A DNA stretch of 64,000 bases from Bispira polyomma (GCA_965649765.1 OZ287757.1:15128001-15192000); one strand, 5' to 3'; positions 36,806 to 59,690 are shown, counted from the stretch's first letter. The notes: generated from the sequence alone by a model not told the origin. Translations and numbers: made by a program.

Positions 36806-36964
36806 ATGTTTTGTTACAAACCGAGATATGTTTTGGTTCTTATATTTGGTTTAATCACCACAGCCGTATATGAATTTACCCCAAAAAGGTTAATTGATAA
36901 AAGTATGTTTGTGCAGATACAAAGCCATAGTGGAGGAAAACACAGGAAGGCAGATGATTTTCAC
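36806..36964 (+). CDS. Proposed first coding exon (cytoplasmic tail, signal anchor, stem) of sulfotransferase copy B
   Basis: aaaATG; MFCYKPR followed by hydrophobic YVLVLIFGLITTAVYEF; phase-0 donor CAC|GTAAGC fits the phase-0 acceptor at 60214; lies in the duplicated unit. Confidence 0.65.
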
Positions 36965-38779: not shown

Positions 38780-39083
38780 CTTGAAAGTAATATGCTTGAA
38801 TTATAATGGATGGACAGATGACAATAAAGTGTTACGCCAGGCTATAATAAACTCTCAAGATTATGACATTTGTTGTCTTACAGAAACTTATTTATTTAAT
38901 TTGAAGGATAAATTATAAGATAAAACTTATTTCAACATCAGACAATGTTAAAGCACCTAAACCTTTGGGTAGTGTCGCTATTTTAGTCAAAAATTGTGTT
39001 TTGGAGAACTTCTATGTTTCCATCTGTGATAAATCGGTCCTGGCTTTGAAAATAACACACAAATACACCAAATTTAATGTAGT
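38780..39083 (+). mobile_element. LINE APE-endonuclease fragment, left half; continues at 47856 after the Gypsy-A insertion
   Basis: VICLNYNG, DICCLTETYL, GSVAILVK; the frame resumes V|IVACYLPP across the TAGT TSD. Confidence 0.75.
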
Positions 39084-40060
39084 TGTGGCGACCTTCAGTA
39101 TAGTCTCAAGTTCAAAATATAAACAGCTGCATCTGAATGTTCAACTGATCTGACTTCGCGTTGTGTTCAAAGTTATAGTGACCAGTTACTGACCACGACT
39201 AAGGTTCCCATAGTATAACAAGAACCTCTTACGATCACGCTTGGTATGAAATGGACACTTGGCTGTATTTCGGGATACTTAATAAAAGATTAAAAGACTA
39301 ATTATAGAGTTAAAATATATCTTCTTTTATTTAAAGACTCATTTTATAACTTCATTACATGTTTTTACAATTGAGCAGAGTTCTCATAACTCACCAGTTT
39401 TAATACACTATTGGATTATATTTAAGACGCAAAGAAACATTAACTGAACCCATCAAACTAGCTAGTACTGGGATGCCATTCACCTAACTTAATGGTGGCC
39501 CCTAAAAGTGCCAGTGCACTGATGCAGGTTCCACCAAACCATAGTGTGAACTGACCTCCCAGTATCTTCTGTAAGTACAGGGCTAAGTATAATTAATATT
39601 TACCATATTTTACTGCGGCAAAAAGAGCTTCCAGTATATATTTCCTGGTATACTGTTTGTTTACTAGTTATACTAGAACACACTCTAGGCCACCCTCTCC
39701 TCCTGCAAAAACCCACTTGTTTATATACACAATTACGGTGCTTCCCGGTGAATCTCCGGATATTCTTATGAAGACCTTGCACCTGTTTACTAATATAACA
39801 TTTACATTTAATATGAATTTGACTGTATACATTTGCTAGCTTATAATTATAACACACTAAATATGCAAGTTTAAAGACAAATTGACCCACAGTAGAAGTC
39901 TTACCTTACATTAAACATTTTAAGATGACCTTAAATTATTGACCAACTTTGCTAAGTTATGTATATTATATACAAAAGCAGTGGGCGGAGAAACCACCGC
40001 AAACACCGACAGCAGTAAAAGAAGGGAATTGATATAGCCTTTCTGTGGCGGGTCGTTTCA
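39084..40060 (-). repeat. 3' LTR of Gypsy-A (977 bp)
   Basis: Matches 46896-47851 with ~13 substitutions and one ~21-bp indel; PPT gatgggggtggaatat at 40061-40076. Confidence 0.95.
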
Positions 40061-40137
40061 ATATTCCACCCCCATCTTACAAATGTTATGTCCCCATAAC
40101 ATGTCCCCATAGCATGCAACACACACTAACGCTATTT

Positions 40138-40350
40138 GGGGAGGTCTGGTGGTTAGAAGCCAATAATCTTTGGTGTGCCACCAATGCGGGTTTGAATCCT
40201 GTTCACTCCCTCATGTGGGAAACCCTGTCAGGCACCCGATGTAGGTCGGTGGTAACAGTGCTTCAAACTGGTTACTCTAACCATCAAATCCGGCCATCAT
40301 GATATGCACCAAGCTGTTGAAAGCAATGTAAACCCCAACTAAATACATAT
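40138..40350 (+). mobile_element. Second-family tRNA-derived SINE inside the Gypsy-A 3' UTR
   Basis: A-box-like tctggtggttag, B box GGTTTGAATCC, gtgggaaa core, catgatatg..agctgttgaaagcaatgtaaac 3' end. Confidence 0.65.
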
Positions 40351-40860
40351 TCTAGGGTTATTGTTACTCTGGCAACAACTGATTATAACAATAATAGAAT
40401 TCCAATAAACTCATTGCAACAGACAGTATAAAAGTACAAAAACGTGAAAACATATGAATATGGTAACGTGAGGTACTTTCGTTATTTACATAAAAGTATA
40501 ACAAATATAAATCAAAACATATTCATATAGCAATGCTAAATTAATACAGAAAACAAGTAAAAAGTATAAAAATAAAGCTAACTGTTGACAACATTGTGGC
40601 TTGAGCACATAAAAACACAATCTGTAAAATGGTGCACCTTGAATACAATAATCTCAATTTAATACAAAAACATACTGGAATATCAAGTTGTATTTGGCTA
40701 TACACTACAACATAAGTGATAGCACTAATGGTGTCCTATAGCAGACTCTACATTAACTCGACTGAAGAAAATAACCTGATACATTACATTTAAGAAACTA
40801 CACCAGCAACAAAATCATTATTTCCCTTAACATTTTAGAATTTCCCTTATCATTTTATAA

Positions 40861-41655
40861 TTAGTTATACTCATACTCTACATAGTCCAAAAACTGTTGC
40901 TGCTGTAAAATCTTTGACTTTTCCTGTGAGCGTCTTATCTTTGCCTCCGACTCTTTTCTTAGTTGCCGCTCTTCCTGAAGCTTTTGTTTTAAGTCTTTAA
41001 TGGCTGCCTCAGCCTTCTCCCGATCGAAACGATTGAGTGCGTGCCTCGCCTTCTCTCTCTCTTCTATCCAAAATTTTGCCTTGGCCTCAGCTTTTAAAAC
41101 ATTCTTTAACAGAATGTCTCTTGATGTAGAGAGACCTTCATGGTGGTCAATAAGTGGCTCTTGGAGTTGAGGTGCAGAGGTAGTTGCAGTCTCAATCTGA
41201 GTCCTGAGTGGTAGAGCTTTGGGTGTAAGGACGAGCTGGCTTCTCGTCTCCGGTACACTTACTTCTCTCCTGCGGTACCCAGCTGGTGGACATTTTACCC
41301 CAGGGTTGACATAAAAGCGGTTCTTACGCTTTGAGGGAACGGCCTTAGATTCCTGATGATGCTTTTGCAGCGCATGCCTCTTGACATCAGCCGACTGTTT
41401 GAATACTTTTGTGCAGGATGCACATTCAAATAAGATCACTTCATTTTCATGGACTTCTGCCCAGTGACGCATCAGCGCAAAGGGCTTCGAGAATGTTTTG
41501 CCACTGCAGTCGCCCACTGGACATTGCAGTTTAACATTCTCTTGGCCCTCTGCCTCGTCCATCTTTTTCTCTTCAAGAACTTCCTGCCATTCATCATTCT
41601 CTTCCATTTCTCTCAAATTTCTTTCCAGCTCAGTGAAGAGGTCTATTTCCTCTGC
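40861..41655 (-). CDS. Gypsy-A ORF3: acidic N-terminus, two C2H2 zinc fingers, coiled coil (intact frame)
   Basis: CPVGDC..F...FALMRHWAEVH and CASC...F....DVKRHALQKHH; frame open back to the acceptor ttttag|41655; homologous to Gypsy-B ORF3. Confidence 0.85.
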   Translation of the reverse strand, partial: AEEIDLFTELERNLREMEENDEWQEVLEEKKMDEAEGQENVKLQCPVGDCSGKTFSKPFALMRHWAEVHENEVILFECASCTKVFKQSADVKRHALQKHHQESKAVPSKRKNRFYVNPGVKCPPAGYRRREVSVPETRSQLVLTPKALPLRTQIETATTSAPQLQEPLIDHHEGLSTSRDILLKNVLKAEAKAKFWIEEREKARHALNRFDREKAEAAIKDLKQKLQEERQLRKESEAKIRRSQEKSKILQQQQFLDYVEYEYN

Positions 41656-41745
41656 CTAAAATATATAATATTAACACTTCTTTAATTATATGTGACCACC
41701 ATGTTTTATTTGTCTATTTAATTTAGAACTTAACATGGAATATCA

Positions 41746-44700
41746 CTACATTTGAACTTGAACACCTGCTTCTTTATTTCTGGATTCTAACCAGCTGACA
41801 GGAGTTTCATGATCATAGCTCTTAATGTGGTCTACATGTAGCGTAATAACTCTAGACTCAGGCCTTTCCTGAACCCGGTAATTCAGATCACCCAGTTTCC
41901 CAACAACTAGATATGGTCCTTTCCAAGCCCTACCAAACTTTAGTCTACCACTTGGGAGATGATAGACCCAAACCCAATCTCCCACCTTAAACTTACGGAT
42001 CTCAGAGTTCCTGTCATATGAGCGTTTTTGCCTCAGGGCACTTGCTTTGACAGCTTCTCTCACTTTCTCAAAAGCATTAGTCATTGTAAGTCTGATCCAC
42101 TCAACATACTCAATTGGACGCTGGGGAACTTCCCCCATGTTACTGGATCCATACATGAGATCTATTGGAAGGTTTATCTCTCTGCCAAACATTAGAAGGT
42201 TGGGTGTACTTTGTGTGCTTTCATGGACTGATGCTCTGTATGCCATCATGACATAAGGCAAATGATCATCCCAGTCCGGTTCACAAGAACAAAAGGATTT
42301 AAGCATAGACTTCAAAGTACGATTGTACCATTCAACAAGGCCATCTGTCTGAGGTCTATAACGTGAAGTCCTAACTTTTTTCATGTCTAGAAGATTACAC
42401 ATTTCCTGAAAAAGGTGCGACTCAAAATTCCTGCCCTGGCACCACTTGAGGTTGCATCACTATTATTAATAGTCTCAATACAACTGGGACTCCTACTTAA
42501 GGCTGGATCCCGACTAACAGAAGGAGATTTGTCAGTGTCTAAAGCAGAACCACTTGGTTTTTGAGGACGATGGTCACCCACGCTAGTCGCCATGCTAGCT
42601 GACTTTGTCCCCCCAGAGTTAGAATCAGCCTGATCCTGATCTCTATGCCCTTTAGCTTTGCTTCTAGTTATCACACAAACACAGTGGTCTGCTGATAATG
42701 CACAGTCTTCACAGTCACCCCTCTTACATCTTCTGGGTGGTCGTCGCGACAGACCATCAGCATTTAAGTGCACTGCCCCCTTACGGTGTTGCGTCTCAAA
42801 ATCATAGGAACTTAATACCGCTAACCACCTAGCTAACATACCCTCTGGCTCCCTAAAGTTAACTAACCATCGCAATGAGGAATGGTCTGTCCTTAAGATA
42901 AACCTCCTTCCCCATAGATAATGATGAAACTGTTTGATGAACACTACTGCTGCCAGCAGTTCTCTCATAGTAACACAATAGTTTTGCTGAGTTTTGCTAA
43001 GTGTCTTGCTGGCAAAGCACAAAACCTTTTCTTGGCCATTTTCCTGAATTTGTGACAAGACTGCACCTATTCCACAGAGACTAGCATCAGTGTCAAGCAC
43101 AAATATACCATCTCTGTTTGGATAGGCAAGCACGATTGAGTCACTGCTCAGTTTATCCTTTAGCACAGTAAATGCTTCTTCACAGTTTTTGTCCGACACA
43201 TATTTGACATTTTTCTTTGTTAATGCATGCAGTGGCGATGCAATACTTGAGAATGACTGGATAAATTTTCTATAATATGAAGCATAACCGAGGAAACTCC
43301 TAACCTGCTTAATGTTCTGGGGCCTTGGCCAATCTCTAATGGCTTCAAGCTTTTCAGGGTCACAAGACACACCTTCCCTAGACATAATATGTCCTAAGAA
43401 TGTAACTGATTCCTAAAACAACTTACACTTCGAAGGTTTCAACACTAGTCCTGCCCTTCTTAACCTCTGGAATACCAATTCAACATTTTCAAGACTTTCT
43501 GGAAAGGATTGTCCAAAAGTTACAATGTCATCTAAGTATAAAACAGCCTTAGACCATTGTAACCCACTTAAAACTAACTCCATAAGAGATTGAAACGTTC
43601 CAGGAGCATTTGATAAGCCAAACGGAAGAACAGTAAACTGCCTCAACCCCCTCCTAGAACTAAAAGCCGTTTTACACTTGTCATCAGGATGCATAGCAAC
43701 CTGATAGTACCCGTGGGCCAAATCCATGGTAGAAAGTACTTGGATCCAGATAGAGAATCTAGGCACTCTTGAATGCGGGGCAGAGGCACCGCCGATTTCC
43801 TCATGACCATATTTATCGCACGATAATCCACACACACCCTTATATCGCCAGTTTTCTTGACCACTATGACCAAAGGAGATGACCAGGGGCTATTGCTTGG
43901 TTCAATTATACCCTCAGCCTCCATCTTGTCAAGTTCCTTTTCAACTAACTCTTGTTGTGCAATAGGTTGGCGACGGGGACGTTGTTTTATAGGTACAGCA
44001 TTACCTGTGTCAATGTGATGTTTAACAAGGTCAGTTCTACCAAGTTTACCTTCAGGACTTTTGAAAATATCTTGGTACCGATGGGTACCCCCTCCTAGAA
44101 CTAAAAGCCGTTTTACACTTGTCATCAGGATGCATAGCAACCTGATAGTACCCTTGGGCCAAATCCATGGTAGAAAGTACTTGGATCCAGATAGAGAATC
44201 TAGGCACTCTTGAATGCGGGGCAGAGGCACCGCCGATTTCCTCATGACCATATTTATCGCACGATAATCCACACACACCCTTATATCGCCAGTTTTCTTG
44301 ACCACTATGACCAAAGGAGATGACCAGGGGCTATTGCTTGGTTCAATTATACCCTCAGCCTCCATCTTGTCAAGTTCCTTTTCAACTAACTCTTGTTGTG
44401 CAATAGGTTGGCGACGGGGACGTTGTTTTATAGGTACAGCATTACCTGTGTCAATGTGATGTTTAACAAGGTCAGTTCTACCAAGTTTACCTTCAGGACT
44501 TTTGAAAATATCTTGGTACCGATGTATGAGTCGGTTGAGCTTCTTAGTTCAGTTTCAGTCAGCTTATCAGAGGTCCGCTCAACCAGAGGTTTCAAGTGCT
44601 CTGGAAGCTCTAGTAAGTCGGTGTCCTCTACTTTCCCTAACCTAGCCACAGAAGCATCATCTGAGGTTTTAACATTTGGTTCAAAAGGTTTTATTTGGTC

Positions 44701-45424
44701 TACTGGCTCAAGTATAGCAATCTTGGTATCTTTACCAACCTGAATAAGACTAGAACCTACATTAGCTACCCTTATCAGCACAGTGTTCCTTTCTACCTTT
44801 ACCAAAGATTTAGCTACCAGTAACCCAGTGGTGTCAGTCAATGTGAGGGGAGGCTCAACTAGACCTATGTCAAAGTCTGGACCACAGTGACTAAACTGTA
44901 TCTGACAGCTAATGATCATTTCATGCTTAGGTGGTACAGAAATAGTCTTGCTTGTATGGACATTTGCAAACTTTATACCACCCCTTTTATACATGCTGAC
45001 AGTATGACCATTACAGTTAATTGTGCCCTTAGCTGCATTTATGATGCATTCATGCTTTTCCATGAAGTCAAGACCCAAAATTGTGCTCTTGTCACCCAGT
45101 GATACAACTTTCACTGGTACCTTATATTGGATATCCTGAACTACAAGATTCATACATGCTTCTCCGAGGACATCCATTACCTCCCCATTGGCATTTTTCA
45201 GGATCAAATTAACCCTTTCCAATGGTGGCCTGTCACATTCAAGAATGCAGTCATAAAACAGGCTATCAACTATAGTGTATGTTGACCCAGTATGTCTCCA
45301 GTCCCATAACCTCACCTCCTATATACCAACAAGATGAACTAATAGTTTCAATAATCCCCTCAGATGGCCCCTTATACTTTTCTGCTGAGAATGTGGCCCC
45401 ATTCTCAGCCTCACCTAGTTTAAC
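41746..45424 (-). pseudogene. pol: Gypsy-A pol (PR-RT-RH-IN), disrupted
   Basis: RVCVDYR, YLDD, TDAS, ADGLSR, RPQTDG, GPY; small deletion at the protease DTG, 441-bp duplication in RT, deletion of the integrase N-terminal half. Confidence 0.93.
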
Positions 45425-46809
45425 TTAGCTTTGCCTTGGTTGTCAATCCCCCCCTTATTTGCATGGTTCTTGGGGCAGTCCCGAGAATAGTGACCCTTTT
45501 CATGACACCTGTAACATTCAACTTCTGTTAATTTCCGACCCCTGACCTGGTAAGTACCCTTATTTGTATGGTCATGATTCGGCTTATTTGGCGTCATAGT
45601 CTTAAGTTGGTCAGTTATCTGATCTATTTGGTCACGATTTTGCTTCAGTGCAGACAAAATATCTTGCAGAATTTTGTCTTCACTTCTATCTTCCACAGCA
45701 AAAACTCTCCCACCAACTGGCTTTACAAACTTCTTTTGTGAAGTCTGTTCAAAACTTTCATACTCAGTTGCTAATGAGATAGCCTCATGTAAACTACGGG
45801 GATGTGCAAATTGCACATGCTTTTTAATATCAATGTTCCCCAAGCCATTTATGAACTGGTCAAGAACCCACTGTTCCTGTGCCTTAAGACTAATCGTAGG
45901 GAATGCCTTAGATGCTAATCTCCTTAGGGCATACCCATACTGCATGGGAGTTTCACTGTCTTTCTTGACCCGGTTCCTGAACTCAATCTTGTATGTAACC
46001 TCCCGTTCTGCAGGGTTAAACCTGTTTTCTAATTCGGTTATTAGGGCATTGTAATCATGAGTATCAATGTATGGAGCCAAATCACTGAAAACCCTTTGGG
46101 CCTCCCCCTGTAAACTCATGATTAACTGAGTTGCTCTTTCATCATAACCCCACCCATTCCAGTTTGCTACAGTCTCAAAATGGTTCATATAATCATTCCA
46201 TTCTGTTGACTGCCCATCAAACTTATCAGGGTCACGTTGCCTGCGGTAATTAGTTCGTGCTGGCTCTCTACAGCCTAAACCATGATTCTCACGCTGAGGT
46301 TTGAACCTACGATCCCCATTACCATTTAGCCTTATACTGTGTTGGTGCCCACCTAGACTAGTCTGCCTTAAACTCCTAGCCCTAAGATCCTGACCAACCT
46401 GCCTATTTTCATAGCCCTTTTGTGAATCTGGAACTCAAGGCTGTGCCTCAGGCCTTAAAGGCTGATTGTGCCTCTCTGCCTGTGTCTGAAAAATGCCTGG
46501 ATCACTATGATTGACCCCTACTTTTCCCTTAATTGGCTTAACAGGAGTAGAATGGATGATGTCATCCAGCTGTAAACCACAGGATTCATCATCGCTACGA
46601 TTATTCTCATTTCTGAGCCCTAAACCCCTTAAGTCAGGTGGAGCTGTGGTTGCAGATGTAGGCCTTTGATATCTGACTGGAACAGTATTAAACTGTACTT
46701 CGGAATCAAGCCCTGTCCCAATAGACTCCCCATCTTGCCTTCTGTGAGGCCACCTGGGTATCCATTCCCGAACAGTCTGCATCCAGCTCCTTGAGCCTGA
46801 CTTACTCAT
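45415..46809 (-). pseudogene. gag: Gypsy-A gag with one in-frame stop (46435-46437)
   Basis: KFDG..W..Y..HFE.VA.WNGW, QFINGL, CYRCHEKGHYSRDC zinc knuckle; the two track ORFs are in the same frame. Confidence 0.92.
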
Positions 46810-46870
46810 ACTGCCCTAATATTCTTAAACTCACAAAAAAAAAATCCCTCTTAAATACAGTGACATACAA

Positions 46871-46888
46871 ATCCTGGTCACGGCACCA
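46871..46888 (-). promoter_or_regulatory. Primer-binding site, tRNA-His (Gypsy-A)
   Basis: TGGTGCCGTGACCAGGAT is complementary to the invertebrate tRNA-His 3' end (..AUCCUGGUCACGGCACCA). Confidence 0.88.
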
Positions 46889-46895
46889 TTAATTC

Positions 46896-47851
46896 TGTGG
46901 CGACCTTCAGTATGCAGCTGCATCTGAATGTTCAACTGATCTGACTTTGCGTTGTGTTCAAAGATATAGTGACCAGACACTGACCACGACTAAGGTTCCC
47001 ATAGTATAACAAGAACCTCTTACGATCACGCTTGGTATGAAATGGACACTTGGCTGTATTTTGGGATACTTAATAAAAGATTAAAAGACTAATTATAGAG
47101 TTAAAATATATCTTCTTTTATTTAAAGACTCATTTTATAACTTCATTACATGTTTTTACAATTGAGCAGAGTTCTCATAACTCACCAGTTTTAATACACT
47201 ATTGGATTATATTTAAGACACAAAGAAACATTAACTGAACCCATCAAACTAGCTAGTACTGGGATGCCATTCACCTAACTTAATGGTGGCCCCTAAAAGT
47301 GCCAGTGCACTGATGCAGGTTCCACCAAACCATAGTGTGAACTGACCTCCCAGTATCTTCTGTAAGTACAGGGCTAAGTATAATTAATATTTACCATATT
47401 TTACTGCGGCAAAAAGAGCTTCCAGTATATATTTCCTGGTATACTGTTTGTTTACCAGTTATACTAGAACACACTCTAGGCCACCCTCTCCTCCTGCAAA
47501 AACCCACTTGTTTATATACATAATTACGGTGCTTCCCGGTGAATCTCCGGATATTCTTATGAAGACCTTGCACCTGTTTACTAATATAACATTTACATTT
47601 AATATGAATTTGACTGTATACATTTGCTAGCTTATAATTATAACACACTAAATATGCAAGTTTAAAGACAAATTGACCCACAGTAGAAGTTTTACATTAC
47701 ATTAAACATTTCAAGATGACCTTAAATTATTGACCAACTTTGCTAAGTTATGTATATTATATACAAAAGCCGTGGGCGGAGAAACCACCGCAAACACCGA
47801 CAGCAGTAAAAGAAGGGAATTGATATAGCCTTTCTGTGGCGGTTCGTTTCA
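46896..47851 (-). repeat. 5' LTR of Gypsy-A (956 bp)
   Basis: Adjacent to the PBS; TATATAA at 47763-47757. Confidence 0.95.
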
Positions 47852-48234
47852 TAGTAATAGTAGCCTGTTACCTTCCACCGGATAACAGTCTATATGGGAA
47901 AAATATTGATATACTTTTTCAGTCATCTTATAAATCTATTGTGGTGACTATTGAATGCCATAAAAAACAGTCGTCTCCCTGATCAATCTTTATTGTCTTT
48001 TGATGATTGTTATGACATCACGGATATTAAGAGTAATCCAAATGTTAAAGGCCATAAAGCACAAAGTACTAAAGGAAGTCATAGTACCAAGGTATCATCT
48101 ATGAACAGTCATTATGATGTTTAAAACAAACCACATGAATTTATGAATTCAGTGCAATTTAAATTGGCTGTAACAGACATAATCAATACTATTCAGTCAC
48201 TTGACGTTAATCAAGAAAATTCAGATAATGGATG

Positions 48235-50012
48235 GATCAATATCAGGCTTAAAAGTAAACACCTACAAAACTAAAATTATTTGGATTGGCGAAAAAAAAG
48301 AACTCAAAAGTAAAATTCCATGTCGACAACAGGCTGATATGGGGCACAACAGAGTTTACTTTACTTGGCATCCACTTCTCAGTTGACCTGGATAAAATTA
48401 TTAATATGAACTATCAACTTGTCATCCCTAAAGTAGAAAAATGTTTAAAAAACTGGAGAAATCGGTATCTAACACCAATTTGTAAAATTACTGTCATAAA
48501 AACCTAAATTATACCCAAGTTTAATCACTTGTTTATTTCGATTTCAAGTCCAAAAGCAGAATTTGTTGAACAGTTGAATAGCCCTCTGTACAATTTTATT
48601 TGGGACAATAAACCTGATAAAATTAGGCGATCGCATCTCAATAAGGACAACACACAAGGTGGTCTTAAAATGGTGGATATAAATAATTTTATTAAAGAAC
48701 TTAAGATAACATGGATTCGAAGGTTATACCAAAATAAAAAAGCCCCTTGGATACATCTAGCTAAAATTAACATCAAATCTATTGAAAAATTGCTATATTT
48801 AGGATCTGAGTGGACCCTAAAAGTCACAAAGGAAATTAATAACAAATTATGGCAGGATGTGTTAGTTACTTGGACCGATTTTCTGGAAATAATTTCCTCC
48901 AAAAATACTTTCATTGAAAAATTATATGGCCCACTCTGGTACAATCCAAATATTTTTAAAGTACCATTCATCATCCCTCAATTGTATAATAGTGGGATAA
49001 TCTCGCCTATTGACTTAATTTCAAATTAAGGGAATATTATTTCCCAAGGAGATATTAAACATAGACACAATATTCCAATCCACTTTTTAGTCTAGCACAG
49101 ATTGACAACTGGCCTGAAAGAATATCTCAAAAACTTAAATTTTGTGCAAACCCAACCTGAACGACCATATTTTCAATACCACATAAAATTACTCTCAAGG
49201 TCTAAAAAAAGGAGTCAAGATTTTTATCATACCCTAAACAATAATATGGATGATAAATCAATGTACAGAATCGAATGGGAAAACACTTTGAACATAACTA
49301 TAGATCAAAACAATTGGAAAAATGTATTCCGACTGTGCTTTAAAAGTATAAAAGACAACAACCTTATTTGGTTTCAGTACAGACTTTTATTCATTATTCT
49401 TGGTACAAAACATTATTTGAGAAAAATTTATCAGTCTTATAACGCCAAATGTTCTTTTTGCATAAAAAGGGGATGAAACTATATTACACCTATTTGTATT
49501 GTGTCCAAAATCAGTTAATTTCTGGAACTGTATACAAACATGGCTTAAACGTGTAATTGGAGTTGATTTGTCTCTGGCCCCCCTACATATATTATTTGGA
49601 GAATGTCAATTGGGAATAGCCCACTCATCAAAAAATGTTGTCTATATGACTGCCAAACAATATATCTTTAATTGCTCTATAAATAGTGCCAGACTAAACA
49701 TTTTTGAATACCAGGCTTTCTTGCGGTCAAAATTTATAGAACAAAGATACTTGTCAATAATTGAAATACAATTTGAAAAATTTATCAAAAAGTGGTCAGT
49801 GTTTGCTAACCTTTTTCAATAATTTGTAGTATTTAAATTTATCTTGTTAGTTTTACATTGTACATGTACTTGTATGTGATATCAGTTGATATATATTGAA
49901 AGTCTTAATTAGAAGTTTGCCTATCTTTGACTTCCCAAGTATTATAAATGAATAGATATTGTATATTTATAATATTGTGAATAAGAATAAATCAACTTGC
50001 AGGGGGAAAAAA
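48235..50012 (+). mobile_element. L1/Tx1 3' half, degenerate
   Basis: ISGLKVN..KT, WDNKPDKI, GGLKM, CSFC..ETI.HLF..C. Confidence 0.85.
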
Positions 50013-50208
50013 ATTGTTAAATCATAGAAACAGTCATTTTCCCAGATGAGAAACTCGAAATACAAGATTTAACTTCAGGTAACAAAACTATTATTGATCT
50101 TTTTACCTCTATAATCATGTACCCTACATCCTATCTGTTCTTATTACAGAATTTAGAAAAGTGAAGTTAAGTCTAAACTTACAAAAAGGAAAAACCACTG
50201 TTTAATAT

Positions 50209-51429
50209 TGTAACCACCCTGTTTAGCCCAGCTGACCAAATTAAGATATAAGTTTCAATAAAGTATCAGTTCACGTTGTGTTCAAGTAGGCAGGTCGCCA
50301 GATAACAGATTCGTATAGGCAAGGTCACTGAATAAGCTGGGGGTTATTGAAGCCTGGATCAATAAGCTCACAAGATGACTTTTAATTACAAATTAAGAAC
50401 AACAAAATTAACTTCAATATGTATATTATAAATGAAAAAGTGTACATATAATTATACGGTACAATAACCCAGAAAAACAACAATATAAATGCACCAGTCC
50501 TGTGTACTGATATAAATTTAAGACAACTAGGTGGCAGTGGCAAAATACCAAGAACAACACTATATATTCTACAATTAATGTCAGCCTATTTAATTACAGT
50601 CTATATAGTTCAACAAGCTAGGCCTGACAAAACATACCGCCTGACAAATATTCAAGTTACATTATAATAAACACCTAGACCGGCGAAACAAGGCAGCAAA
50701 TTACATGTGTCTATATAAGTAATTATTAGTTACTATATCTCACAACTAAAATATAACACAAGTTGCAAGAACTGTCAAAAACATGAGGTTTTGTTGATCA
50801 ACAAAAAGGGAGGGAAAACCCCCCAATCTGACAATAATAAGCAAATAAATAGCAAAACCTCAATTAAATTGGATAAAAGTTACACACTATATTTGAATAC
50901 ATTAATGACATAAATTAAGAGATTTGGATCCGAAAAGAATGAACCGAACCGGAATAAATTAGAATATTATAAGAATAAATCCGAGAAATGGATGTACCTT
51001 TCGTTGTCCCCGGCTAGAACACCACTGAATAATAACTACACCTAGTCTTATATAGAGACCAAACGACGAGCTTCGGGATGTGAATCGGCTGTTTCCGGAA
51101 GAAAAAGCCCCCACAATGCATCACTCGGCTCCCGAAATGGCCCGAATACCGCTCGGAACACACCGCCCTAATAGTAAACAACACCGACCGGTGTATATAT
51201 AAGGTGATCACGTCATCACAAGATGGCGGATCTCGCTTCCGGGAAAATGTTATAAAACAGATGAAAATGCTGCGATTTTAGTGAATGACAACCTTATTTT
51301 AAAGTAAAATATTAGGATATACCTAGCATACAAGTAAGTGAGCAATTCTCGCTTCATAACTTCCATTATTAAGAGATATATCGTAAGCACGAGTCCCCAA
51401 TTAGTACTCGCGATGACTGGGTCATCACA
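50209..51429 (-). repeat. 3' LTR of Gypsy-B (1221 bp, complete)
   Basis: Matches 58991-59690 apart from a 520-bp block; PPT gcaggggggaa at 51430-51440. Confidence 0.95.
50996..51229 (-). promoter_or_regulatory. Putative Gypsy-B LTR promoter: YY1-like and CRE-like sites, TATA, Inr, splice donor
   Basis: CCGCCATCTT (51229-51220), TGACGTG, TATATAAG (51054-51047), TCAGT 28 nt further on (51028-51024), AAG|GTACAT at 50997. Confidence 0.55.
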
Positions 51430-51989
51430 TTCCCCCCTGCTTACACTCTGTTATGCCCTCATAACAATAACTCACTAAAACAGCTGACTACATGCCCAAA
51501 GTGGCACCTCTATAATTACATAAAAACATTATGTATTACATATATATATATATATATATCATTAAAACATAATCAATACTGATATTTAGTTGTTTATAAA
51601 AGTTCATAAATCACAATTAAAAATTGTAAAATGTCCATTAAATCTGAAAAAGAAAAACGTGACTTAATCCACGTCAATAAATCATTAAAATATGTAAAGT
51701 ACCCTTTATACGACTGCACTATAAGGCATTTAATGACTTGGAATACATCACTATCTGTTCTCTTGAAATACAGATACTGACAACATAGTAATACTGTTAC
51801 AATGCAAAATTTGAATAAAATAAGTGATAAATAAGTGTCCTCGTGTGACACTGTAAAAGGTTAAACTTTTGACATCTGTCAAAAGTGTAACTTGACATTT
51901 AAAACATTAATACTTGACATAAATTTTGAAATTTTGATAAATACCCCAATTTAGAAGTGATAAGAAAGTAATATCAATCCCCAAAAAAT

Positions 51990-52932
51990 TCAACAAAATT
52001 TATTCTTCCCCCAAATTAAGTCTCCCAAAACCATTTCTTGAAAACTAAAAATATCGACATTGTCCAAAACACTCTTGCCCTTTACCATTTGTCCTTTCAA
52101 CTTCCTGATCTCCTCCTCCATCCTCCGTCTTTCAGAACGTTCTCCCTTAAGTTGCTCTGTCAATCCTTTCTCCCTTAGTCTTTGTTCTTTTACCTCCAGC
52201 TTCTTTAATTTGTCCTTGGCACACTTTTCCTTCTGTGACCAGAACTTCATTTTTTCCTTGGCCAACAAAATGTCTCTGATCAGTTTTTTTTTCTGCTGTT
52301 TCTGCTGTGCTCAGACATGCACCTTCTACTCTCCCGGCATGTGGCTCTGGGACATCTGGCAGCATTGGGTGGTCTTGTTCTTCAAGGTAGACTTCTACAT
52401 CTCTTTCTAGTACTTCTTCGTCTTTTGTAATTTCGACTTTTACAAATTTGGGGTCGATATCCATAACGGATTGGCATGGCACTGTCTCTGAAATAATCGG
52501 CTTGTCAGTGCCAGCCACCGACTTTGGCTTCGGACCCACAAATTCTCCTGGGTTAAGATATGTTTTATTTGCTACAATTTTCGTTCTAAGGTTCTCCCCC
52601 GAGCTCGAAACTTTGGCCTCAGTAACATTTAAATGATGTATTTTGACCAGATGTCTTTCCAGGTCGTATGGCCTTTTGAATGTCCTACAAGAAGTGCCTG
52701 TGGTGCACTTGTACAGGGTAATGAAGGGCGAGTGGACATCAGCCCAGTGTCTGCTTAAGGCGAACTTCTGTCCAAAGGACGTATTACGGCGTAAGCAATC
52801 TGGTACCAGACAGCTGTACCTTCCTCCACTCTTGTTCCAGCCTCGTTTGGCGATGACCTCTGCCCCTCCACCTTCCTCATCCATCTTATCCTCAAAGGCT
52901 CCCAAATCGAATACAAACTCGTTGACAGACAT
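51990..52932 (-). CDS. Gypsy-B ORF3: two C2H2 zinc fingers and coiled coil; one frameshift in an A9 run (~52284-52292)
   Basis: CLVPDC..F..KFALSRHWADVH and CTTGTSC..F....DLERHLVKIHH; second frame LAKEKMKFW..LTEQLKGERSERRRMEEEIRKL aligns with Gypsy-A ORF3. Confidence 0.82.
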
Positions 52933-52981
52933 TTTGTTTTACTGAAAAACATAATACAGAAAAGAATATAAGGCCTGAGCC

Positions 52982-55900
52982 CTAATATTCCTGCCCTAAA
53001 CTGACTTGAACTGATTTATCACTACAGTCACCCTGTGATAACCAGCTAACGGAGTATCACTGTGAGAATAGGTCTTAATGTGGTCTATGTGTACAGTAAT
53101 AGGCTGAGAATTTTCCTCTTTTTGTATTTGATAATTGAGTTCTCGTAGTTTAGAAATCACCAAGTACGGACCTTTGCAACCCCGACCAAATTTGTCCCTA
53201 TTGTCAGGTGGATAAAAGATCCACACCCAATCACCTCACCTGAAGCTTCGTGTCTGAGTGTTCATGTCATATGTCCGTTTTTGTCTGACAGCACTTTTGT
53301 GTAAATTGTCTCTAGCTATCCTATAGGCAGTTTGCATGGAGTTCCTGACCCATTCTACGTACTCAACAGGACATGTGGAAACCTCAGAACCCATTTGTCT
53401 GTCTCCGTACAGGATATCTACAGGTAACCTTACCTCCCTTCCAAACATAAGAAAGTTTGGAGTAAAGTTTATACTTACTTGTGTAGTCGATCTGTAGGCT
53501 AAGAGTATGTACGGCAAGTGATCATCCCAGTCACTCCTGAAATCACTCACTACAGGCCTTAGTAACTGTCTAATTGTCCTATTCATTCTCTCAACCAGTC
53601 CGTCTGATTGTGGTCTATAACGTGATGTTCTAGTCTTTTCTATGTCAAGTAACCTACACATTTCCTTAAAAAGTAATGACTCATAATTTCTACCTTGGTC
53701 TGTATGAATCACCAGAGGGACACCATATCGGCAAACCCATTGTGTAACAAGTATGTCAGCCATTGTCTGTGCAGTCTGATCTGGCAAGGGATATGCTTCC
53801 ATATACTTAGTAAAGTAGTCCACTACCACTAGAATGTAATTATTCCCATTCTTACTTGTTGTTACAGGACCCACAATATCACAAGCAATTCTGTCAAGAG
53901 GGTTACCTACTAACTGAGGCTTAAGGGGAGCCCTTTTTGGGTTATGACCTGCCTTATAGCTTTCACAAACCTTACAAGTTTGACACCAACTGACTATATC
54001 CCGTTTGAAACCTGGCCAATACAACCTACCACGAAGGCTACACAAAGTCCTCCTGACCCCAAAATGACCACTAGTTCTTTTACTATGCAGTTGCTCAAAC
54101 AGCTGCTTCCTTAAGCTTCCTGAAACGACATACTGCATTACTGGAACTTCACTAGAATTACCAGGAACCCATTTTCTATACAGAATATCATCCTGAATTT
54201 CTAACACTGACCACTGAGCACAAAGAGCCTTATATTGCCTACTACGCCCACTGATTTCTGCTTTCTGTGGTTTATCACCTCCAGCAGATTTAAGTTCTAA
54301 GAGGTTACTGATATCATCATCTTGGTATTGAAATTCCCTCAACTCATCAAGTGACCACCTATCAGTCCAATTACTCTGTTGGGAAGTTTTAGCCTTATTT
54401 CTACCTGTAGCATTATATCTGCAGCCAGTCCTACTTTGAATAAACTCATTGTGTTTTACACCGGAGTCCAAGGAACCACCTAACCCAGTCCCAGTCGCTA
54501 TGCTGGGACCCCCACTAAACTCATTAGTGCTTATAAGGGTCCTACTCCCTTGGGTTTTAATGTCCCCCTTAACCTGACTATGTGTAACTACACAAACACA
54601 TTCAGACAATTTCAGGGCACACTCATCACAGTCCTCACGCTTACATTTTCTCGAAGGTATCCGAGACAAACTATCAGCATTAATGTGTAGTGTCCCTTTC
54701 CTATGCTGAACCTCATAATCATATGTACTGAGAACAGAAAACCATCTAGCTAACATACCCTCAGGCTCCCTAAAATTCACCAGCCACTTGAGTGACGCGT
54801 GATCAGTTCTCGGCACAAAATGTCTACCCCAAAGATAATGGTGAAACTGTCTCATAAAAACTACAGCGGCTAATAATTCCCTCATAGTAGTACAATAGTT
54901 TTACTCGGAGTTTTGCTTCCATAAGCAATGACATGTTCTGAATCATTTTCATTAAGCTGACTTAACACTGCACCTACACCAAACAAACTAGCATCAGTAT
55001 CTAATATGTATGTAAGGTCATTATTCGGGTAAGCTAAAACTGGACTTATAATTAGCCTTCTCTTAAGCTCATGAAACGCTTCATGGGACTGACTATTCCA
55101 GTGAAATTTGACATTTTTCTTGGTAAGGTCATGTAGTGGTGCTGCAATATGTGCCTAAAAATGAACCGACTTCCTTTACACATGTGGGAGCTGGCCAGTC
55201 TGATACTGCTTCTAACTTTTTAGGATCACAACTAATGCCCTCCTCAGAAACAACATGACCCAAGAACTCTACTGACTCTTGAAAGAAATTACACTTTGAT
55301 ACCTTAAGCTTTAGATTGGCTTGTCTAAATCTCTTAAAGATTTCTTGTAAGTTTTCAAAAGTTTTTGAGAAATCACTGCCATAAGAGATTATATCATCAA
55401 AATACAGGACACATGTTTCCCACTGTAAACCTCTCATAACTTTTTCAATCAAGTTTTCAAAAGTACTGGGAGCCCCAGGTAACCCAAAAGGCATAACATT
55501 GAACTGCGTGAGACCTCGCCTGGTATAAAATGCTGTTTTGCACTTATCTTCCTGCCTCATGGGAATTTGGCGATAACCACTAGCTAAGTCCATAGTACAG
55601 AAATACTTAGCCCCATCTAAAGAAGAAAGACAATCCTGTGTATTAGGTAAAACTACTGCTGATTTCCTAGAAATCGTGTTAATCGCTCTGTAGTCTATGC
55701 ACACCCTCAAGCTACCATCTTTCTTAGTAACAATTACTAGAGGTGAAGCCCAAGGACTATCACTAGGCTCAATCAACCCTTGTTTTTCTAACTTGTCAAG
55801 TTCTTTTTGTACAGGTTCCCTTTGGGCAATAGGTAATTTCCTTGCTCTTTGTTTTATGGGTGGATGATCACCAATGTTAATGGAATGTTCAGTCAAGTTT

Positions 55901-56804
55901 GTCATACCTAAACAACCATCAGGCCCTACAAAAATGTCCTGATATTGGCTAAGTAAACCTTCAAATTTCAAGACTTCACTTTCCTTAAGTTTTTGTGATA
56001 CTGACTCAATTAAGGGTTGTAAATGCACTGGTAGTTCACCCTTATCCTTACATTTGTCAGTTACTGTCATAAGGTCACCCCTATTTCTGTCACCTTCAAA
56101 AGTTTTACTGAAGTCACTGGTTGTAACAATGCAAGTTTTGTTCCTTTCTTAAGAATTTGCATCTCATCTGTGAAATTTGCCACCCTAACTGGAATGTCCG
56201 GCATCTGTGTATTCACTACACCTTTAGTCACTAACAAGCCAGTCTGTAAAATCACAGAATCTATGGGTTCAACTAAGCCTATGTCTGCCTTAGAATTCCA
56301 ACGTGATTTGTCAAAGCTACCACTAAGTATTATCTCATGGCTTGGTGGAATACAGAAATCTTGGTTCCATCTTTCTGTTCCAACCTAACCTTATAATCAT
56401 CAATACTTATGAAGCCTTTTCCCATGTTCAAAATGCAGTTGTATTTTGTCATAAAATCAAGACCTAGAATTGTACTTGACCAATGTCTCAAATGACCTTG
56501 TACCAATTTGTACACTAACAACTGTTTCTCCATAGACCTTAAGTAAGTTACTACTACCACTCCTTAAGTTCAAGCTGACCTCTTGAAGTGGAAGCCTTAG
56601 GTGTGACTCAAGATTCCTATCAAATCTAATGTCCAGTATGGTATATGTAGACCCTGTATCTACAAGAAATTCTGTTTTGAGTCCTTCCACCTCCCCACTT
56701 ATATACCAACAAGAAGAGCTTATCAATTCCACTACACCTTCCATGGGCCTTATATTTTGACTAGCTGAGAATTCGACCCTATTCCCAGCGATCCCTAGTT
56801 TAAC
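52982..56804 (-). pseudogene. pol: Gypsy-B pol (PR-RT-RH-IN), several frameshifts
   Basis: FLVDTGS, RVCIDYR, YFDD, HHCC (H..RTSGHFG..CQTCKVC), DIVGP..TDQG..E, GPY. Confidence 0.95.
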
Positions 56805-58234
56805 CTAGAGGTTTGTTCTTTCTGTGAATAACCTTGACTTGATTTCCACTGTGGACAGTATTTCTGATAATGCCCATAAGCCTTGCATTTGTAGCACTGT
56901 ACTGTACTAAAATCAGTTTTCCTACTTGTTCCCTTATTGAATTTCCCTTTGTCTGAGCCTTGCCCATTTTCTTGGGGTTTGTTAGAGTCATTAGACCACT
57001 TTTGTACCACTTTCTTGAGGGTTTGCAGTTTTTTTTGTGCTGTTTTGCACTATTGAACACATCGCCTTCAAGAATTGGTTATCAGCCATCCCTTGACCAG
57101 AAGTAGTCTCTATAGCACTACACTTAGCTGGTTTGGGTTTGAACTTGCTATCTCCACTTTCAAAACTCTCATATTCTAAAGCTAAAGCAATAGCTTCATT
57201 CAAATTTTTTGGATGCCCAAACTGAACATGTCTCTTAAGACCATACTGGTTTAAGCCCTTCACAAATTGATCCAAAACCAATTGTTCTTGACAGTCATTT
57301 GGAATATTTGGAAAAACCTTACCAGCTAGTCGTCTCAAAGAATACCCATACTGCATTACAGTTTCCTGTGGTTGACGAAAACGGTTACGAAACTCTAACC
57401 TATAACTGATTTCCCTTTCTACTGGACTAAATCTCCTAGTTAACTCCTTAACCAGTGAATCAAAGTCTTCCACAGCCCCATAGAAAGATAGGTCACCAAG
57501 TACAGGTTGGGCGTGTCCTCTTAAGCTTATGGCTAACTGCATACCTTTTTCTTGATAACTCCAACCATTCCACCCAGAAACAGTTTCAAAGTGTTTAAGG
57601 TAGTCTGTCCAGTCAATTTCTTCTCCGTCAAACTTGTCAGAGTCACACTGTTTTTGTCTATTTGGTCTGTCATTGAACCTATTTCGGTAGCCCGACCTCT
57701 CAGGCATATCATTGGTCACCCTTGGTCTTACATCAGGTCCATTGTAATGATTTGGAATATCACCCATCCCCACACCTTCTGTGTTAGCTGTCTCCCCAAC
57801 CTTTACTTGTCTAACTATTTTTGGTCTATCTGGAACCCATTCTCTGGCTTCAGGCCTTAACCTGGTGTTGACATTACCATCCCCATGTGTACTAATACCA
57901 CTTGTCTTATTAGTCTTGTATGGAGTAGAGTTTTTTGGTCTAATCATGTCACTAAGTTCATCGGATGTATCATAATACTCATTATCCGAATCGACTGCCC
58001 TAAATGGATTAAAATTCTCAGCCATATTACTCCTGGAGGAATACTTCTGATTTTCACTAAGTACGGCTGGAGCCGATTGATTCAAAGTACCCTTTGAATG
58101 CCTTGCAGGGACTTTATTGAATTGTATTTCATCATCAAGACCAGATGAAATTAATCGGTCGCCTGACTGTCTTCTTGGCCATTTAGGAATCCAGTCCAAC
58201 ATAACCTGGAGCTTTTAGATTTCCTACTGTTCAT
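56795..58234 (-). pseudogene. gag: Gypsy-B gag, frameshifted
   Basis: KFDG..W..Y..HFE..WNGW, QFVKGL, CYKCKAYGHYQKYC; homologous to Gypsy-A gag. Confidence 0.92.
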
Positions 58235-58966
58235 ACTAGCTTACAACACCAATGTAGCTCAAAAGTTGCCTTGTTATCTCTGTATGATTCCGGTCAATGC
58301 TATATGTGTAAAAGCGTAAAAATTTAGATATGACCAGGACAAAAATTGTTCACACCAGTGTTCACCTTGGTTAATAACCTTTGTGATGTCACCTTAGTGT
58401 GTATTCCACATGTAAGTTATTTGTAGGGAGTGTTCACAATCAACCACTGTTTTATTCCACCAAGTATTCACCTCAGGTAAGTACCATTTTTGGTTGACTA
58501 AATACTCGTGTTAACAGCAGCAATTCACAGACACACTTTATTACTGTTTTATACCACCATAATATTCACCTCAGGTAAATACCATTTTTGGTTTACGAAT
58601 ACTATGTGTTAATGGTAATAACATTCAATAACCACAAACACACCTGGGTAATTTGTTATGTGTGTATTGAGGGACCAGTCAGACACATTTAAACAATCAC
58701 TGTTTTATATCACCAATTATAATACACCAATGTGTTAATACTAGTGTTAACAGTGACACATACACATATACATGTACACTATATTTACTGTACGTTCACC
58801 ATGTACACCTCTGTGTTATTGTATGACAGTAAATAAACATTCATACAATTACTGATACATCACCAGGCGGTACACCCATATGTCATCGCCACATGTCAAC
58901 AGCAATTTACAATTATACCAAAAAAAATAAAAAATAAAATATATTTATTTGTATTTAAGTTTGCCT

Positions 58967-58984
58967 ATCCTGGTCACGGCACCA
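58967..58984 (-). promoter_or_regulatory. Primer-binding site, tRNA-His (Gypsy-B)
   Basis: 18-mer identical to the Gypsy-A PBS. Confidence 0.88.
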
Positions 58985-58990
58985 AAATTC

Positions 58991-59690
58991 TGTAATCACC
59001 CTATTTAGCCCAGCTGACCAAATTAAGATATAAGTCTCAATAAAGTATCAGTTCGCGTTGTGTTCAAGTAGGCAGGTCGCCAGATAACAGATTCGTATAG
59101 GCAAGGTCACCGAATAAGCTGGGGGTTATTGAAGCCTGGATCAATAAGCTCACAAGATGACTTTTAATTACAAATTAAGAACAACAAAATTAACTTCAAT
59201 ATGTATATTATAAATGAAAAAGTGTACATATAATTATACGGTACAATAACCCGGAAAAACAACAATATAAATGCACCAGTCCTGTGTACTGATATAAATT
59301 TAAGCCAACTAGGTGGCAGTGGCAAAATACCAAGAACAACACTATATATTCTACAATTAATGTCAGCCTATTTAATTACAGTCTATATAGTTCAACAAGC
59401 TAGGCCTGACAAAACATACCGTCTGACAAATATTCAAGTTACATTATAATAAACACCTAGACCGGCGAAACAAGGCAGCAAATTACATGTGTCTATATAA
59501 GTAGTTATTAATTACTATATCTCACAACTAAAATATACCACAAGTTGCAAGAACTGTCAAAACATGAGGTTTTGTTGATATACCTAGCATACAAGTAAGT
59601 GAGCAATTCTCGCTTCATAACTTCCATTATTAAGAGATATATCCTAAGCACGAGTCTACAATTAGTACTCGCGATGACTGGGTCATCACA
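58991..59690 (-). repeat. 5' LTR of Gypsy-B (700 bp, internally deleted)
   Basis: ~14 substitutions versus the 3' LTR; lacks the equivalent of 50799-51318. Confidence 0.93.

What the first reader, a model, noticed from the sequence alone, without database searches (positions are those of the whole stretch)
40861..52932. Gypsy lineage carrying a C2H2 zinc-finger/coiled-coil accessory gene in place of env
Seen: two divergent Gypsy families with unrelated LTRs each have a sense-strand third ORF between pol and the PPT (40861-41655 and 51990-52932). Both show an acidic N-terminus, C-x4-C..FAL.RHWA.VH, a second finger C..C..FK...D..RH....HH, an N..Y.NPG...P motif, a variable linker and an A..K.KFW...coiled coil. 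There is no signal peptide, TM helix or fusion signature, so it is not Env. Inference: an ancient, selected, element-encoded nucleic-acid-binding dimer. It could be an LTR transactivator or repressor (compare foamy virus Tas), an integration-targeting factor or an anti-silencing protein. I do not know of this architecture being described, but could not search.
Basis: partly seen in the sequence, partly recalled or inferred. Interest (0 to 1): 0.88.

Follow-up and report, generated by a model that had tools for sequence, protein, structure and literature searches.

The report
Zinc-finger accessory gene of Gypsy retrotransposons
Two dead Gypsy retrotransposon copies in this probably molluscan window each carry, after pol, a real and conserved third gene for a two-zinc-finger, long-helix protein that has no name in public databases, moves between elements as a cassette, and shares its finger module with giant repeat proteins encoded by bivalve host genes.

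Summary
Observation confirmed. Two complete but dead Gypsy insertions lie on the minus strand (A 39084-47851, B 50209-59690), with 4-bp target duplications and a tRNA-His-type primer site. Each has a third sense ORF just 3' of integrase. ORF3-A is intact; ORF3-B has one frameshift. The protein has an acidic tail, a compact basic module of two C2H2 fingers with a family-specific beta tail (pLDDT 94), a disordered linker and an ~85-aa helix (probable coiled coil). It has no membrane segment, so it is not Env. Relatives from seven further proteins lie 60-570 nt 3' of Gypsy pol in all 10 loci with enough flank, behind an acceptor-like site. Synonymous sites are saturated while the proteins stay alignable. 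Base-contact residues are conserved. Two elements ~96% identical elsewhere fall to ~70% over ORF3, which indicates cassette exchange. I found no Pfam family, database name or paper for it. Best reading: a spliced, trans-acting nucleic-acid-binding regulator of the element, with a CERV/Rev-like RNA adaptor as the main rival. It is a new variant of a known kind (non-env ORF3).

The parts
39084..47851 (-). Gypsy element A, a complete insertion flanked by the 4-bp target duplication ACTA (39080-39083 and 47852-47855)
   Evidence: Self-BLAST LTR pair; termini and duplications read
46896..47851 (-). 5' LTR of A (TG...CA ends)
39084..40060 (-). 3' LTR of A, 98.6% identical to the 5' LTR
46871..46888 (-). 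Primer-binding site of A, 18 nt, identical to that of B; tRNA-His type
   Evidence: It matches 12/12 and 16/18 positions of the reverse primer for a human tRNA-His gene printed in PMC11662652
45415..46809 (-). gag of A (CCHC knuckle); broken by 1 in-frame stop
41746..45315 (-). pol of A (PR-RT-RH-IN order); broken by about 6 frame changes, 1 stop, 1 large internal deletion in the integrase part and 1 tandem duplication of ~145 codons
40861..41607 (-). ORF3-A, intact, 248 aa from its first ATG: acidic tail, two-finger module, linker, long helix
41608..41745 (-). pol-ORF3 spacer of A with a T-rich tract and an invariant TTAG|G, acceptor-like
40085..40100 (-). 16-nt hairpin/palindrome just 5' of the polypurine tract of A
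40061..40078 (-). Polypurine tract of A
46949..46961 (-). Conserved 13-nt U5-side block in the 5' LTR of A (second copy at 39158-39170 in the 3' LTR)
50209..59690 (-). Gypsy element B, a complete insertion flanked by the 4-bp target duplication ATAT (50205-50208 and 59691-59694)
58991..59690 (-). 5' LTR of B
50209..51429 (-). 3' LTR of B; carries one insertion of about 0.5 kb relative to the 5' LTR
58967..58984 (-). Primer-binding site of B, same 18 nt as in A
56800..58202 (-). gag of B; broken by 1 frame change
52996..56744 (-). pol of B (PR, RT, RH, IN H2C2, rve, p58-C); broken by 3 frame changes and 6-8 in-frame stops
51990..52932 (-). ORF3-B; broken by 1 frame change, no stops; same architecture as ORF3-A; closest relative P0012 (48% over 215 aa)
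52933..52995 (-). pol-ORF3 spacer of B with a pyrimidine tract ending in CAG, acceptor-like
51450..51465 (-). 16-nt hairpin/palindrome 5' of the polypurine tract of B
51430..51440 (-). Polypurine tract of B
59055..59067 (-). Conserved 13-nt U5-side block in the 5' LTR of B (copy with one mismatch at 50273-50285)

Best explanation
ORF3 is a genuine accessory gene of one lineage of animal Gypsy (Metaviridae-type) retrotransposons. It is not Env, and it is not a host gene that happens to lie nearby. Shown: it encodes a soluble protein whose basic two-finger C2H2 module has the fold of classical DNA/RNA-binding finger pairs; it sits in a fixed position 3' of integrase; it is kept under purifying selection; and it is swapped between elements as a unit. 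Inferred: it is translated from a spliced subgenomic RNA that uses the acceptor-like site just before its ATG. It assembles through its long helix. It binds a short nucleic-acid target shared by the whole lineage, because its base-contact residues are conserved although most of the LTR sequence is not. My committed mechanism is a trans-acting regulator of the element's own expression. An acidic tail, a DNA-binding module and an oligomerising helix together are the standard build of a transcription activator, and the conserved 13-nt block in the LTR is the best candidate site.
For: Linkage: P0001, P0002, P0012, P0053, P0061, P0079 and P0074 lie 60-570 nt 3' of Gypsy integrase on the same strand in all 10 loci with enough flank. 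In L008 and L014 the pol gene is intact. Selection: ORF3 pairs show pN 0.10-0.33 with pS 0.79-0.86, which is saturated, and the few nucleotide differences among the L008/L009/L010 copies leave the protein identical. Cassette behaviour: L001 and L002 are 95-98% identical through LTR-gag-pol and 69-78% identical from the ORF3 start onward. Fold: whole-protein model pLDDT 80.8, module-only model 93.8, with the helix at 95-98. Nearest solved relatives are TFIIIA, CTCF and Tramtrack. Contact positions: finger 1 +6 is R/K in 18/18, finger 2 +3 is D in 15/18, finger 2 -1 is R/K in 13/18, against a median column entropy of 2.61 bits. The module is always basic (+4 to +17) and the N-terminus is acidic in 15/18. 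Acceptor-like Y-tract plus AG occurs 0-60 nt before the ATG in all eight elements read. ORF3s of LTR retrotransposons are typically expressed from spliced messages (PMC5408684). The shared 13-mer is in LTRs of the A, B and P0061 types.
Against: No transcript, protein or binding data exist here. No conserved splice donor was found in the leader. The coiled-coil signal is borderline: the peak at period 3.5 is reached by 99 of 2000 shuffles, and 45% of helix residues are charged, so a single charged helix is possible. The 13-mer lies in the U5-side end close to the primer site and contains a His codon triplet, so it could be a tRNA-contact site and not a protein site. TFIIIA-like fingers bind RNA as well as DNA, so DNA versus RNA is open. 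A 164-aa variant without the helix also sits 3' of an intact pol, so the helix is not indispensable. Both window copies are dead, so nothing about present activity follows from them.
Confidence: 0.45

Rival explanations
1. Post-transcriptional adaptor. ORF3 binds the element's RNA (leader or 3' region) and promotes nuclear export, stability or packaging of the unspliced genomic RNA, in the manner of CERV of Cer1 or retroviral Rev.
For: CERV is an accessory protein of an animal Gypsy element with a Cys-rich loop plus coiled-coil oligomerisation, and it is required for genomic RNA export (PMC10309623). An element that splices to make ORF3 mRNA needs a way to export unspliced RNA. The best sequence match in the PDB is TFIIIA, a DNA- and RNA-binding finger protein. 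A conserved small hairpin lies 5' of the polypurine tract in A, B, L002 and L005. The 13-mer lies in the transcribed U5-side end of the LTR.
Against: The hairpin is absent from the P0061-type elements that also carry ORF3, and its folding z-scores are weak (-1.1 to -2.1). The acidic tail is not explained. No similarity to CERV or Rev surfaced in any search.
Confidence: 0.25
2. Counter-defence or mimicry. ORF3 is a one-module copy of the domain that giant host proteins carry 10-23 times, and it competes with them for the same target or for the element's DNA. In the reverse direction, the host arrays would be domesticated ORF3 modules that recognise the elements.
For: 94 modules from the giant proteins share the ORF3-specific signature beyond the zinc ligands: Val 98%, His-Trp 82%, Asn 91%, Tyr 73%, Pro 88%. 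The contact positions are hypervariable in the arrays (3.3-3.75 bits) and conserved in ORF3, a contrast expected if arrays diversify their specificities. The arrays look like host genes: a multi-exon 83-kb gene in Sinanodonta woodiana, a 14-kb ORF without terminal repeats or pol nearby, and mRNA-like contigs.
Against: Nothing links the arrays to transposon control. ORF3 modules never have an array module as nearest neighbour (0 of 18), so any transfer is old and its direction is unresolved. It is not known whether the window's own genome has such arrays.
Confidence: 0.12
3. Integration-targeting or tethering factor. ORF3 binds a host DNA motif or chromatin protein and steers the pre-integration complex.
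For: DNA-binding fold and conserved contact residues compatible with a fixed host target. The integrases here end in an SH3-like p58-C domain and lack a chromodomain hit, so a separate targeting device is conceivable.
Against: The two insertions have unrelated AT-rich target duplications (ACTA, ATAT) and no shared flanking motif was seen. There are only two sites, so the test is weak. The acidic tail and the LTR-borne 13-mer are not explained.
Confidence: 0.1
4. Passenger. ORF3 is a captured host fragment with no role for the element, or the ORFs are chance open frames.
For: The module exists in host genes, so capture is a plausible origin. LTR retrotransposons are known to pick up host ORFs (PMC5408684).
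Against: It is retained in the same place in several lineages whose synonymous sites are saturated. It is found next to intact pol genes and in multi-copy identical form, with P0061 on 8 contigs. It has ORF3-specific conserved residues and an added helix absent from almost all array modules. In element A it is the only gene left intact.
Confidence: 0.04

Closest known systems
CERV, accessory protein of the Cer1 Gypsy element of C. elegans (PMC10309623)
   Same: A non-env gene product of an animal Gypsy element. It has a zinc-binding-type Cys motif plus a helical oligomerisation domain, is made from a spliced message, and acts in trans on the element's own RNA.
   Different: No sequence or fold similarity was returned by any search. 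CERV has a proposed C4-type loop in a globular ring-forming domain, whereas ORF3 here has two classical C2H2 fingers. ORF3's function is untested.
Non-env ORF3s of bdelloid rotifer LTR retrotransposons (GDSL lipase-like, DEDDy exonuclease-like; PMC5408684)
   Same: Extra ORFs 3' of pol that are not Env, are shared and exchanged between different retroelements, and are expressed as separate spliced units.
   Different: Those are enzyme-derived domains. This one is a nucleic-acid-binding finger module plus a helix. The host phylum differs, and a zinc-finger type is not among them.
Foamy-virus transactivator Tas
   Same: Concept only: an element-encoded trans-acting regulator with an acidic region and a nucleic-acid-binding part, made from a spliced RNA.
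   Different: Not a relative. The fold search of the viral library gave no hit at E <= 0.001 and no retroviral regulator appeared in the top 50 listed. The profile search of solved structures gave only cellular C2H2 proteins in the 60 shown.
Classical tandem C2H2 finger pairs (Tramtrack, TFIIIA, CTCF, WT1)
   Same: Ligand spacing, beta-beta-alpha fold and finger-finger linker length. Tramtrack superposes at 2.8 A over 60 columns and TFIIIA gives E = 9e-12.
   Different: The module has a further strand pair and a conserved N..Y..P tail that none of the top listed solved structures aligns in full. Only finger 2 of ORF3-A just passes the Pfam cut-off.
Env of errantiviruses (Gypsy ORF3 in insects and other metazoans; PMC13524379)
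   Same: Same position in the element, and probably the same mode of expression.
   Different: ORF3 has no signal peptide, membrane anchor or fusion-protein domain. That survey does not mention a zinc-finger ORF.
Giant multi-module C2H2 proteins of bivalves (e.g. Sinanodonta woodiana KAL3831323.1 and KAL3831324.1, annotated only as hypothetical)
   Same: The same ~80-aa two-finger module with the same signature residues.
   Different: They carry 10-23 modules per protein, mostly no helical tail, and hypervariable contact positions. They are host-type genes without pol nearby.

Membership tests
Ty3/Gypsy (Metaviridae-type) LTR retrotransposon | pol domain order protease - reverse transcriptase - RNase H - integrase | tested here: met
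   Pfam hits in that order on the minus strand in both elements. The integrase core is missing in A through a deletion.
Ty3/Gypsy (Metaviridae-type) LTR retrotransposon | Direct LTRs with TG...CA ends, 4-6 bp target duplication, primer site after the 5' LTR, polypurine tract before the 3' LTR | tested here: met
Named Gypsy clade (GyDB/Repbase sense) | RT/IN phylogenetic placement with reference elements | not testable with these tools
   No named reference set is available. The best named pol relatives are Mytilus proteins at 40-44% identity carrying automatic names.
tRNA-His-primed elements | Primer site complementary to the 3' end of tRNA-His | tested here: met
   12/12 and 16/18 match to the reverse primer of a human tRNA-His gene printed in PMC11662652. 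The host's own tRNA-His was not available, since no tRNA-His gene was found in any locus.
Retroviral/errantiviral Env | Signal peptide, membrane anchor, fusion-protein domain | tested here: not met
   Maximum 19-aa hydropathy is 0.96. No Env family appears in Pfam and there are no Env-like fold hits.
Classical C2H2 zinc finger (Pfam PF00096) | Cys-Cys...His-His ligands with beta-beta-alpha fold | tested here: met
   Finger 2 of ORF3-A scores 25.8 bits against a cut-off of 25.2. The ligands are invariant or nearly so in the 20-sequence ORF3-type alignment and conserved in 94 array modules. The modelled fold is confident. ORF3-B alone is below the cut-off.
Coiled-coil oligomer | Conserved heptad (a/d) hydrophobic periodicity over a long helix | tested here: inconclusive
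   The helix is confident (pLDDT 95-98). The strongest period is 3.5, with conserved hydrophobic columns spaced 7-3-7-7-3-4, but 99 of 2000 shuffles reach it. 45% of helix residues are charged. No multimer prediction was available.
CERV-like accessory proteins | Sequence or fold similarity to CERV | not tested
   No direct comparison was made. None of my searches returned a protein identifiable as CERV, but the large libraries carry no names.
Foamy-virus Tas-like transactivators | Sequence or fold similarity to a retroviral transactivator | tested here: not met
   The viral fold library gave no hit at E <= 0.001, and its best rows are generic C2H2 proteins of phages and giant viruses.
Non-env accessory ORF3 of LTR retrotransposons (functional class) | Sense ORF between pol and the polypurine tract, conserved with the element across lineages, not Env | tested here: met

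The most novel reading that the evidence does not exclude
The element's DNA-binding module and the giant host arrays are two sides of one conflict. Molluscs would have a transposon-recognition system built from dozens of diversified copies of a retrotransposon-type finger module, functionally parallel to vertebrate KRAB zinc-finger arrays but of independent origin. The Gypsy ORF3 would be either its source or its competitor.
Probability: 0.1. Interest if true: 0.9.

Novelty: new variant of a known kind. Interest (0 to 1): 0.62.

Why it matters
Accessory genes are what distinguish complex retroviruses from simple retrotransposons, and very few are known in invertebrate Gypsy elements besides Env and CERV. 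Here a whole lineage carries a DNA/RNA-binding regulator-like gene and trades it by recombination. The gene can now be recognised from a clear signature. This gives annotators a new, unnamed family to mask or label. It offers a second, independent animal case for asking how LTR elements control their own transcription or RNA export. It also exposes an unannotated family of giant multi-module zinc-finger genes in bivalves whose relation to transposons deserves study.

Tried and rejected
- Troyka lineage: rejected, because it makes 3-bp duplications and has CG...CG ends, whereas these elements have 4-bp duplications and TG...CA ends.
- Pfam on ORF3 and on six of the giant proteins: nothing beyond weak generic finger hits.
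- Rfam on the 22-kb region: no family.
- Tandem repeats between ORF3 and the LTR as possible binding arrays: none shared.
- Shared k-mers in the ORF3-to-PPT spacers: none.
- Splice donor in the leader: no conserved site.
- Neighbour-joining tree of 168 modules to decide capture versus domestication: unresolved.
- Third word-indexed protein search with the family profile: swamped by helix words and returned one known hit.
- Cluster look-ups for species names of ORF3-type proteins: none carry a meaningful name. One JGI auto-name ('YbaB') is spurious.
- Search for sample accessions in papers: uninformative.
- tRNA genes in all fetched loci, to test the primer assignment: no tRNA-His. The question was settled from a primer printed in a paper instead.
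- One literature query failed on syntax.


Full report
ANATOMY. The region holds two full Gypsy insertions on the minus strand. Element A runs 39084-47851, with LTRs 98.6% identical and the duplication ACTA. Element B runs 50209-59690, with LTRs about 98% identical and the duplication ATAT. Both LTR families have TG...CA ends. Both elements have the same 18-nt primer site 6-7 nt after the 5' LTR and a G-rich polypurine tract. Pfam places CCHC gag (in A), protease (in B), RT, RNase H and integrase with an SH3-like p58-C end in Gypsy order. The primer site matches 12 of 12 and 16 of 18 positions of a reverse primer for a human tRNA-His gene printed in PMC11662652.

STATE OF THE COPIES. Both are dead. 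Counts come from alignment to intact relatives, with no paths kept.
- Element A: pol has about six frame changes, one stop, one large internal deletion in the integrase part and one tandem duplication of about 145 codons. gag has one stop. ORF3 is intact.
- Element B: pol has three frame changes and six to eight stops. gag has one frame change. ORF3 has one frame change and no stop.
- B's 3' LTR also holds one insertion of about 0.5 kb.
ORF3-B was never read across its break. Its two frame pieces were searched and aligned as separate rows.

THE PROTEIN. ORF3-A is 248 aa from its ATG. With a 20-sequence family alignment, AlphaFold gives pLDDT above 90 for residues 30-115: two beta-beta-alpha fingers tied together by an extra strand pair. 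A disordered linker follows at about 120-160, then one helix at 165-250 with pLDDT 95-98. The module alone models at pLDDT 93.8 and pTM 0.73. Solved relatives are ordinary nucleic-acid-binding finger pairs: TFIIIA at E = 9e-12, then CTCF, INSM1 and ZNF410 by sequence, and Tramtrack at 2.8 A over 60 columns by fold. None of the top listed solved structures aligns the whole module, so the strand pair and N..Y..P tail look family-specific. The viral structure library returns nothing significant. No segment is hydrophobic enough for a membrane helix. Hydrophobic periodicity along the helix peaks at 3.5 residues across the family, but only at about the 5% level. I therefore call the coiled coil probable, not shown.

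A FAMILY TIED TO GYPSY. The word-indexed search found two relatives. The exhaustive profile search found 976 proteins at E <= 0.001. About a third of the best 150 are generic finger arrays that match the fingers only. Sixteen have the whole architecture in one stretch, and 42 are short proteins with one or two complete modules. I read context wherever it was available. P0001, P0002 and P0012 lie on three large contigs of one assembly. P0053, P0061 (three contigs shown out of eight), P0079 and the 164-aa helix-less variant P0074 were also read. All lie 60-570 nt after a Gypsy integrase on the same strand, twice after an intact pol. Three contigs were too short to tell. ORF3-A groups with P0001 and ORF3-B with P0012, so both sub-lineages occur in at least two genomes.

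SELECTION AND EXCHANGE. All deep ORF3 pairs show non-synonymous differences of 0.10-0.33 per site, while synonymous sites are saturated at 0.79-0.86. That is the same pattern as the neighbouring integrase end. Between A and B the integrase C-part is 53% identical and the ORF3 module 32%, so ORF3 evolves faster but is kept. The most telling result is the L001/L002 pair. It is 95-98% identical through LTR, gag and pol, and identity then falls to 69-78% from the ORF3 start onward. Local decay cannot do this. One of the two elements acquired a diverged ORF3 cassette by recombination at the pol-ORF3 junction. PMC5408684 gives a precedent for such sharing of non-env ORF3s.

EXPRESSION (INFERRED). 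In all eight elements read, a pyrimidine-rich tract ending in TAG or CAG lies 0-60 nt before the ORF3 ATG, and in three of them it abuts or nearly abuts the ATG. This has the form of a 3' splice site and fits the general rule for ORF3s quoted in PMC5408684. I found no conserved donor and had no RNA data.

WHAT IT MIGHT BIND. In 18 ORF3-type proteins the helix positions that contact bases in classical fingers are much more conserved than the median column (2.61 bits): finger 1 +6 is R/K in 18 of 18 (0.65 bits), finger 2 +3 is Asp in 15, and finger 2 -1 is R/K in 13. The module is always basic, and the N-terminal tail is acidic in 15 of 18. This points to one shared target across lineages. Two conserved cis blocks were found in otherwise dissimilar non-coding DNA. 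The first is a 13-nt block near the U5-side end of the LTR, 30-95 nt before the primer site. It is present in A, B, L002, L005 and the distant L009/L010 elements. The second is a 16-nt hairpin just before the polypurine tract, present only in the A/B clade. Either could be the target. The 13-mer could equally be a tRNA-contact site.

THE HOST CONNECTION. The top profile hits are giant proteins of 1,900-5,000 aa with 10-23 copies of the ~80-aa module. Their modules share the ORF3 signature beyond the zinc ligands, but their contact positions are as variable as any column, and they almost never carry the helix. They behave as host genes. Two are adjacent annotated genes in Sinanodonta woodiana, one of them spanning 83 kb with introns. 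One is a 14.2-kb uninterrupted ORF with no pol nearby and no bounding repeats. Several sit on mRNA-sized contigs. ORF3 modules are always closest to other ORF3-type or short variants, never to array modules. The direction of transfer is unresolved. I used the mussel protein as the tool returned it. I neither joined nor searched its exons.

HOST AND LITERATURE. The window is AT-rich. The closest named pol relatives are Mytilus proteins at 40-44% identity. A mollusc, probably a bivalve, is likely, but the species is not identified. The mollusc LTR survey (PMC6238403) and the metazoan Env survey (PMC13524379) do not mention such an ORF. Keyword searches found no description. Repbase and GyDB could not be consulted.

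VERDICT.

STEPS LEFT OUT AND SLIPS. I made two slips, and nothing was deleted. First, after I recalled a tRNA-His sequence from memory in my reasoning. They are not repeated here.

Noticed in passing
window 35470-38215 and 61191-64000: A ~2.7-kb direct repeat pair (85-94% identical) brackets both Gypsy insertions. It has no coding domain. It could be a segmental duplication or the ends of a larger repeat unit.
   Followed up: no
L001 ~9960-11130 versus L002: There is a sharp switch from ~96% to ~70% nucleotide identity at the start of ORF3 between two otherwise near-identical elements, which indicates recombinational swap of the ORF3 cassette.
   Followed up: yes
window element A, 39084-47851: pol is heavily damaged although the LTRs are 98.6% identical, and ORF3 is the only intact gene. 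The copy may already have been defective when it inserted (mobilised in trans), retaining ORF3.
   Followed up: partly
L014 5571-6065 (P0074); also L015, L016: A 164-aa variant consists of the finger module only, without the long helix. It lies 3' of an intact gag and 1,216-aa pol, and many similar ~160-aa proteins appear among the hits.
   Followed up: partly
L003 10001-24190; L004 835-8403; L011: Giant proteins with 10-23 copies of the module form an unannotated host gene family seen in several assemblies. Its biology is unknown.
   Followed up: partly
L005 6058-9021: A non-LTR retrotransposon ORF (endonuclease plus RT) is nested inside the integrase region of the B-type element of another genome.
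   Followed up: no
window 14314-16686 (+), 21312-22604 (-), 26625-27751 (+): Further reverse-transcriptase ORFs (RVT_1, zf-RVT) of other retroelements, apparently non-LTR type.
   Followed up: no
window 660-1388 and 60572-61192: A sulfotransferase-like ORF and a 66%-identical second copy, possibly the host gene family into which this repeat-rich stretch is embedded.
   Followed up: no
L001 11400-12064: An array of ~28-30-bp tandem repeats lies downstream of ORF3 where the 3' LTR would be expected. That element seems truncated at its 3' end.
   Followed up: no
window 50209-51429: The 3' LTR of element B is about 0.5 kb longer than its 5' partner because of one inserted stretch of unknown nature with no other copy in the window.
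   Followed up: no
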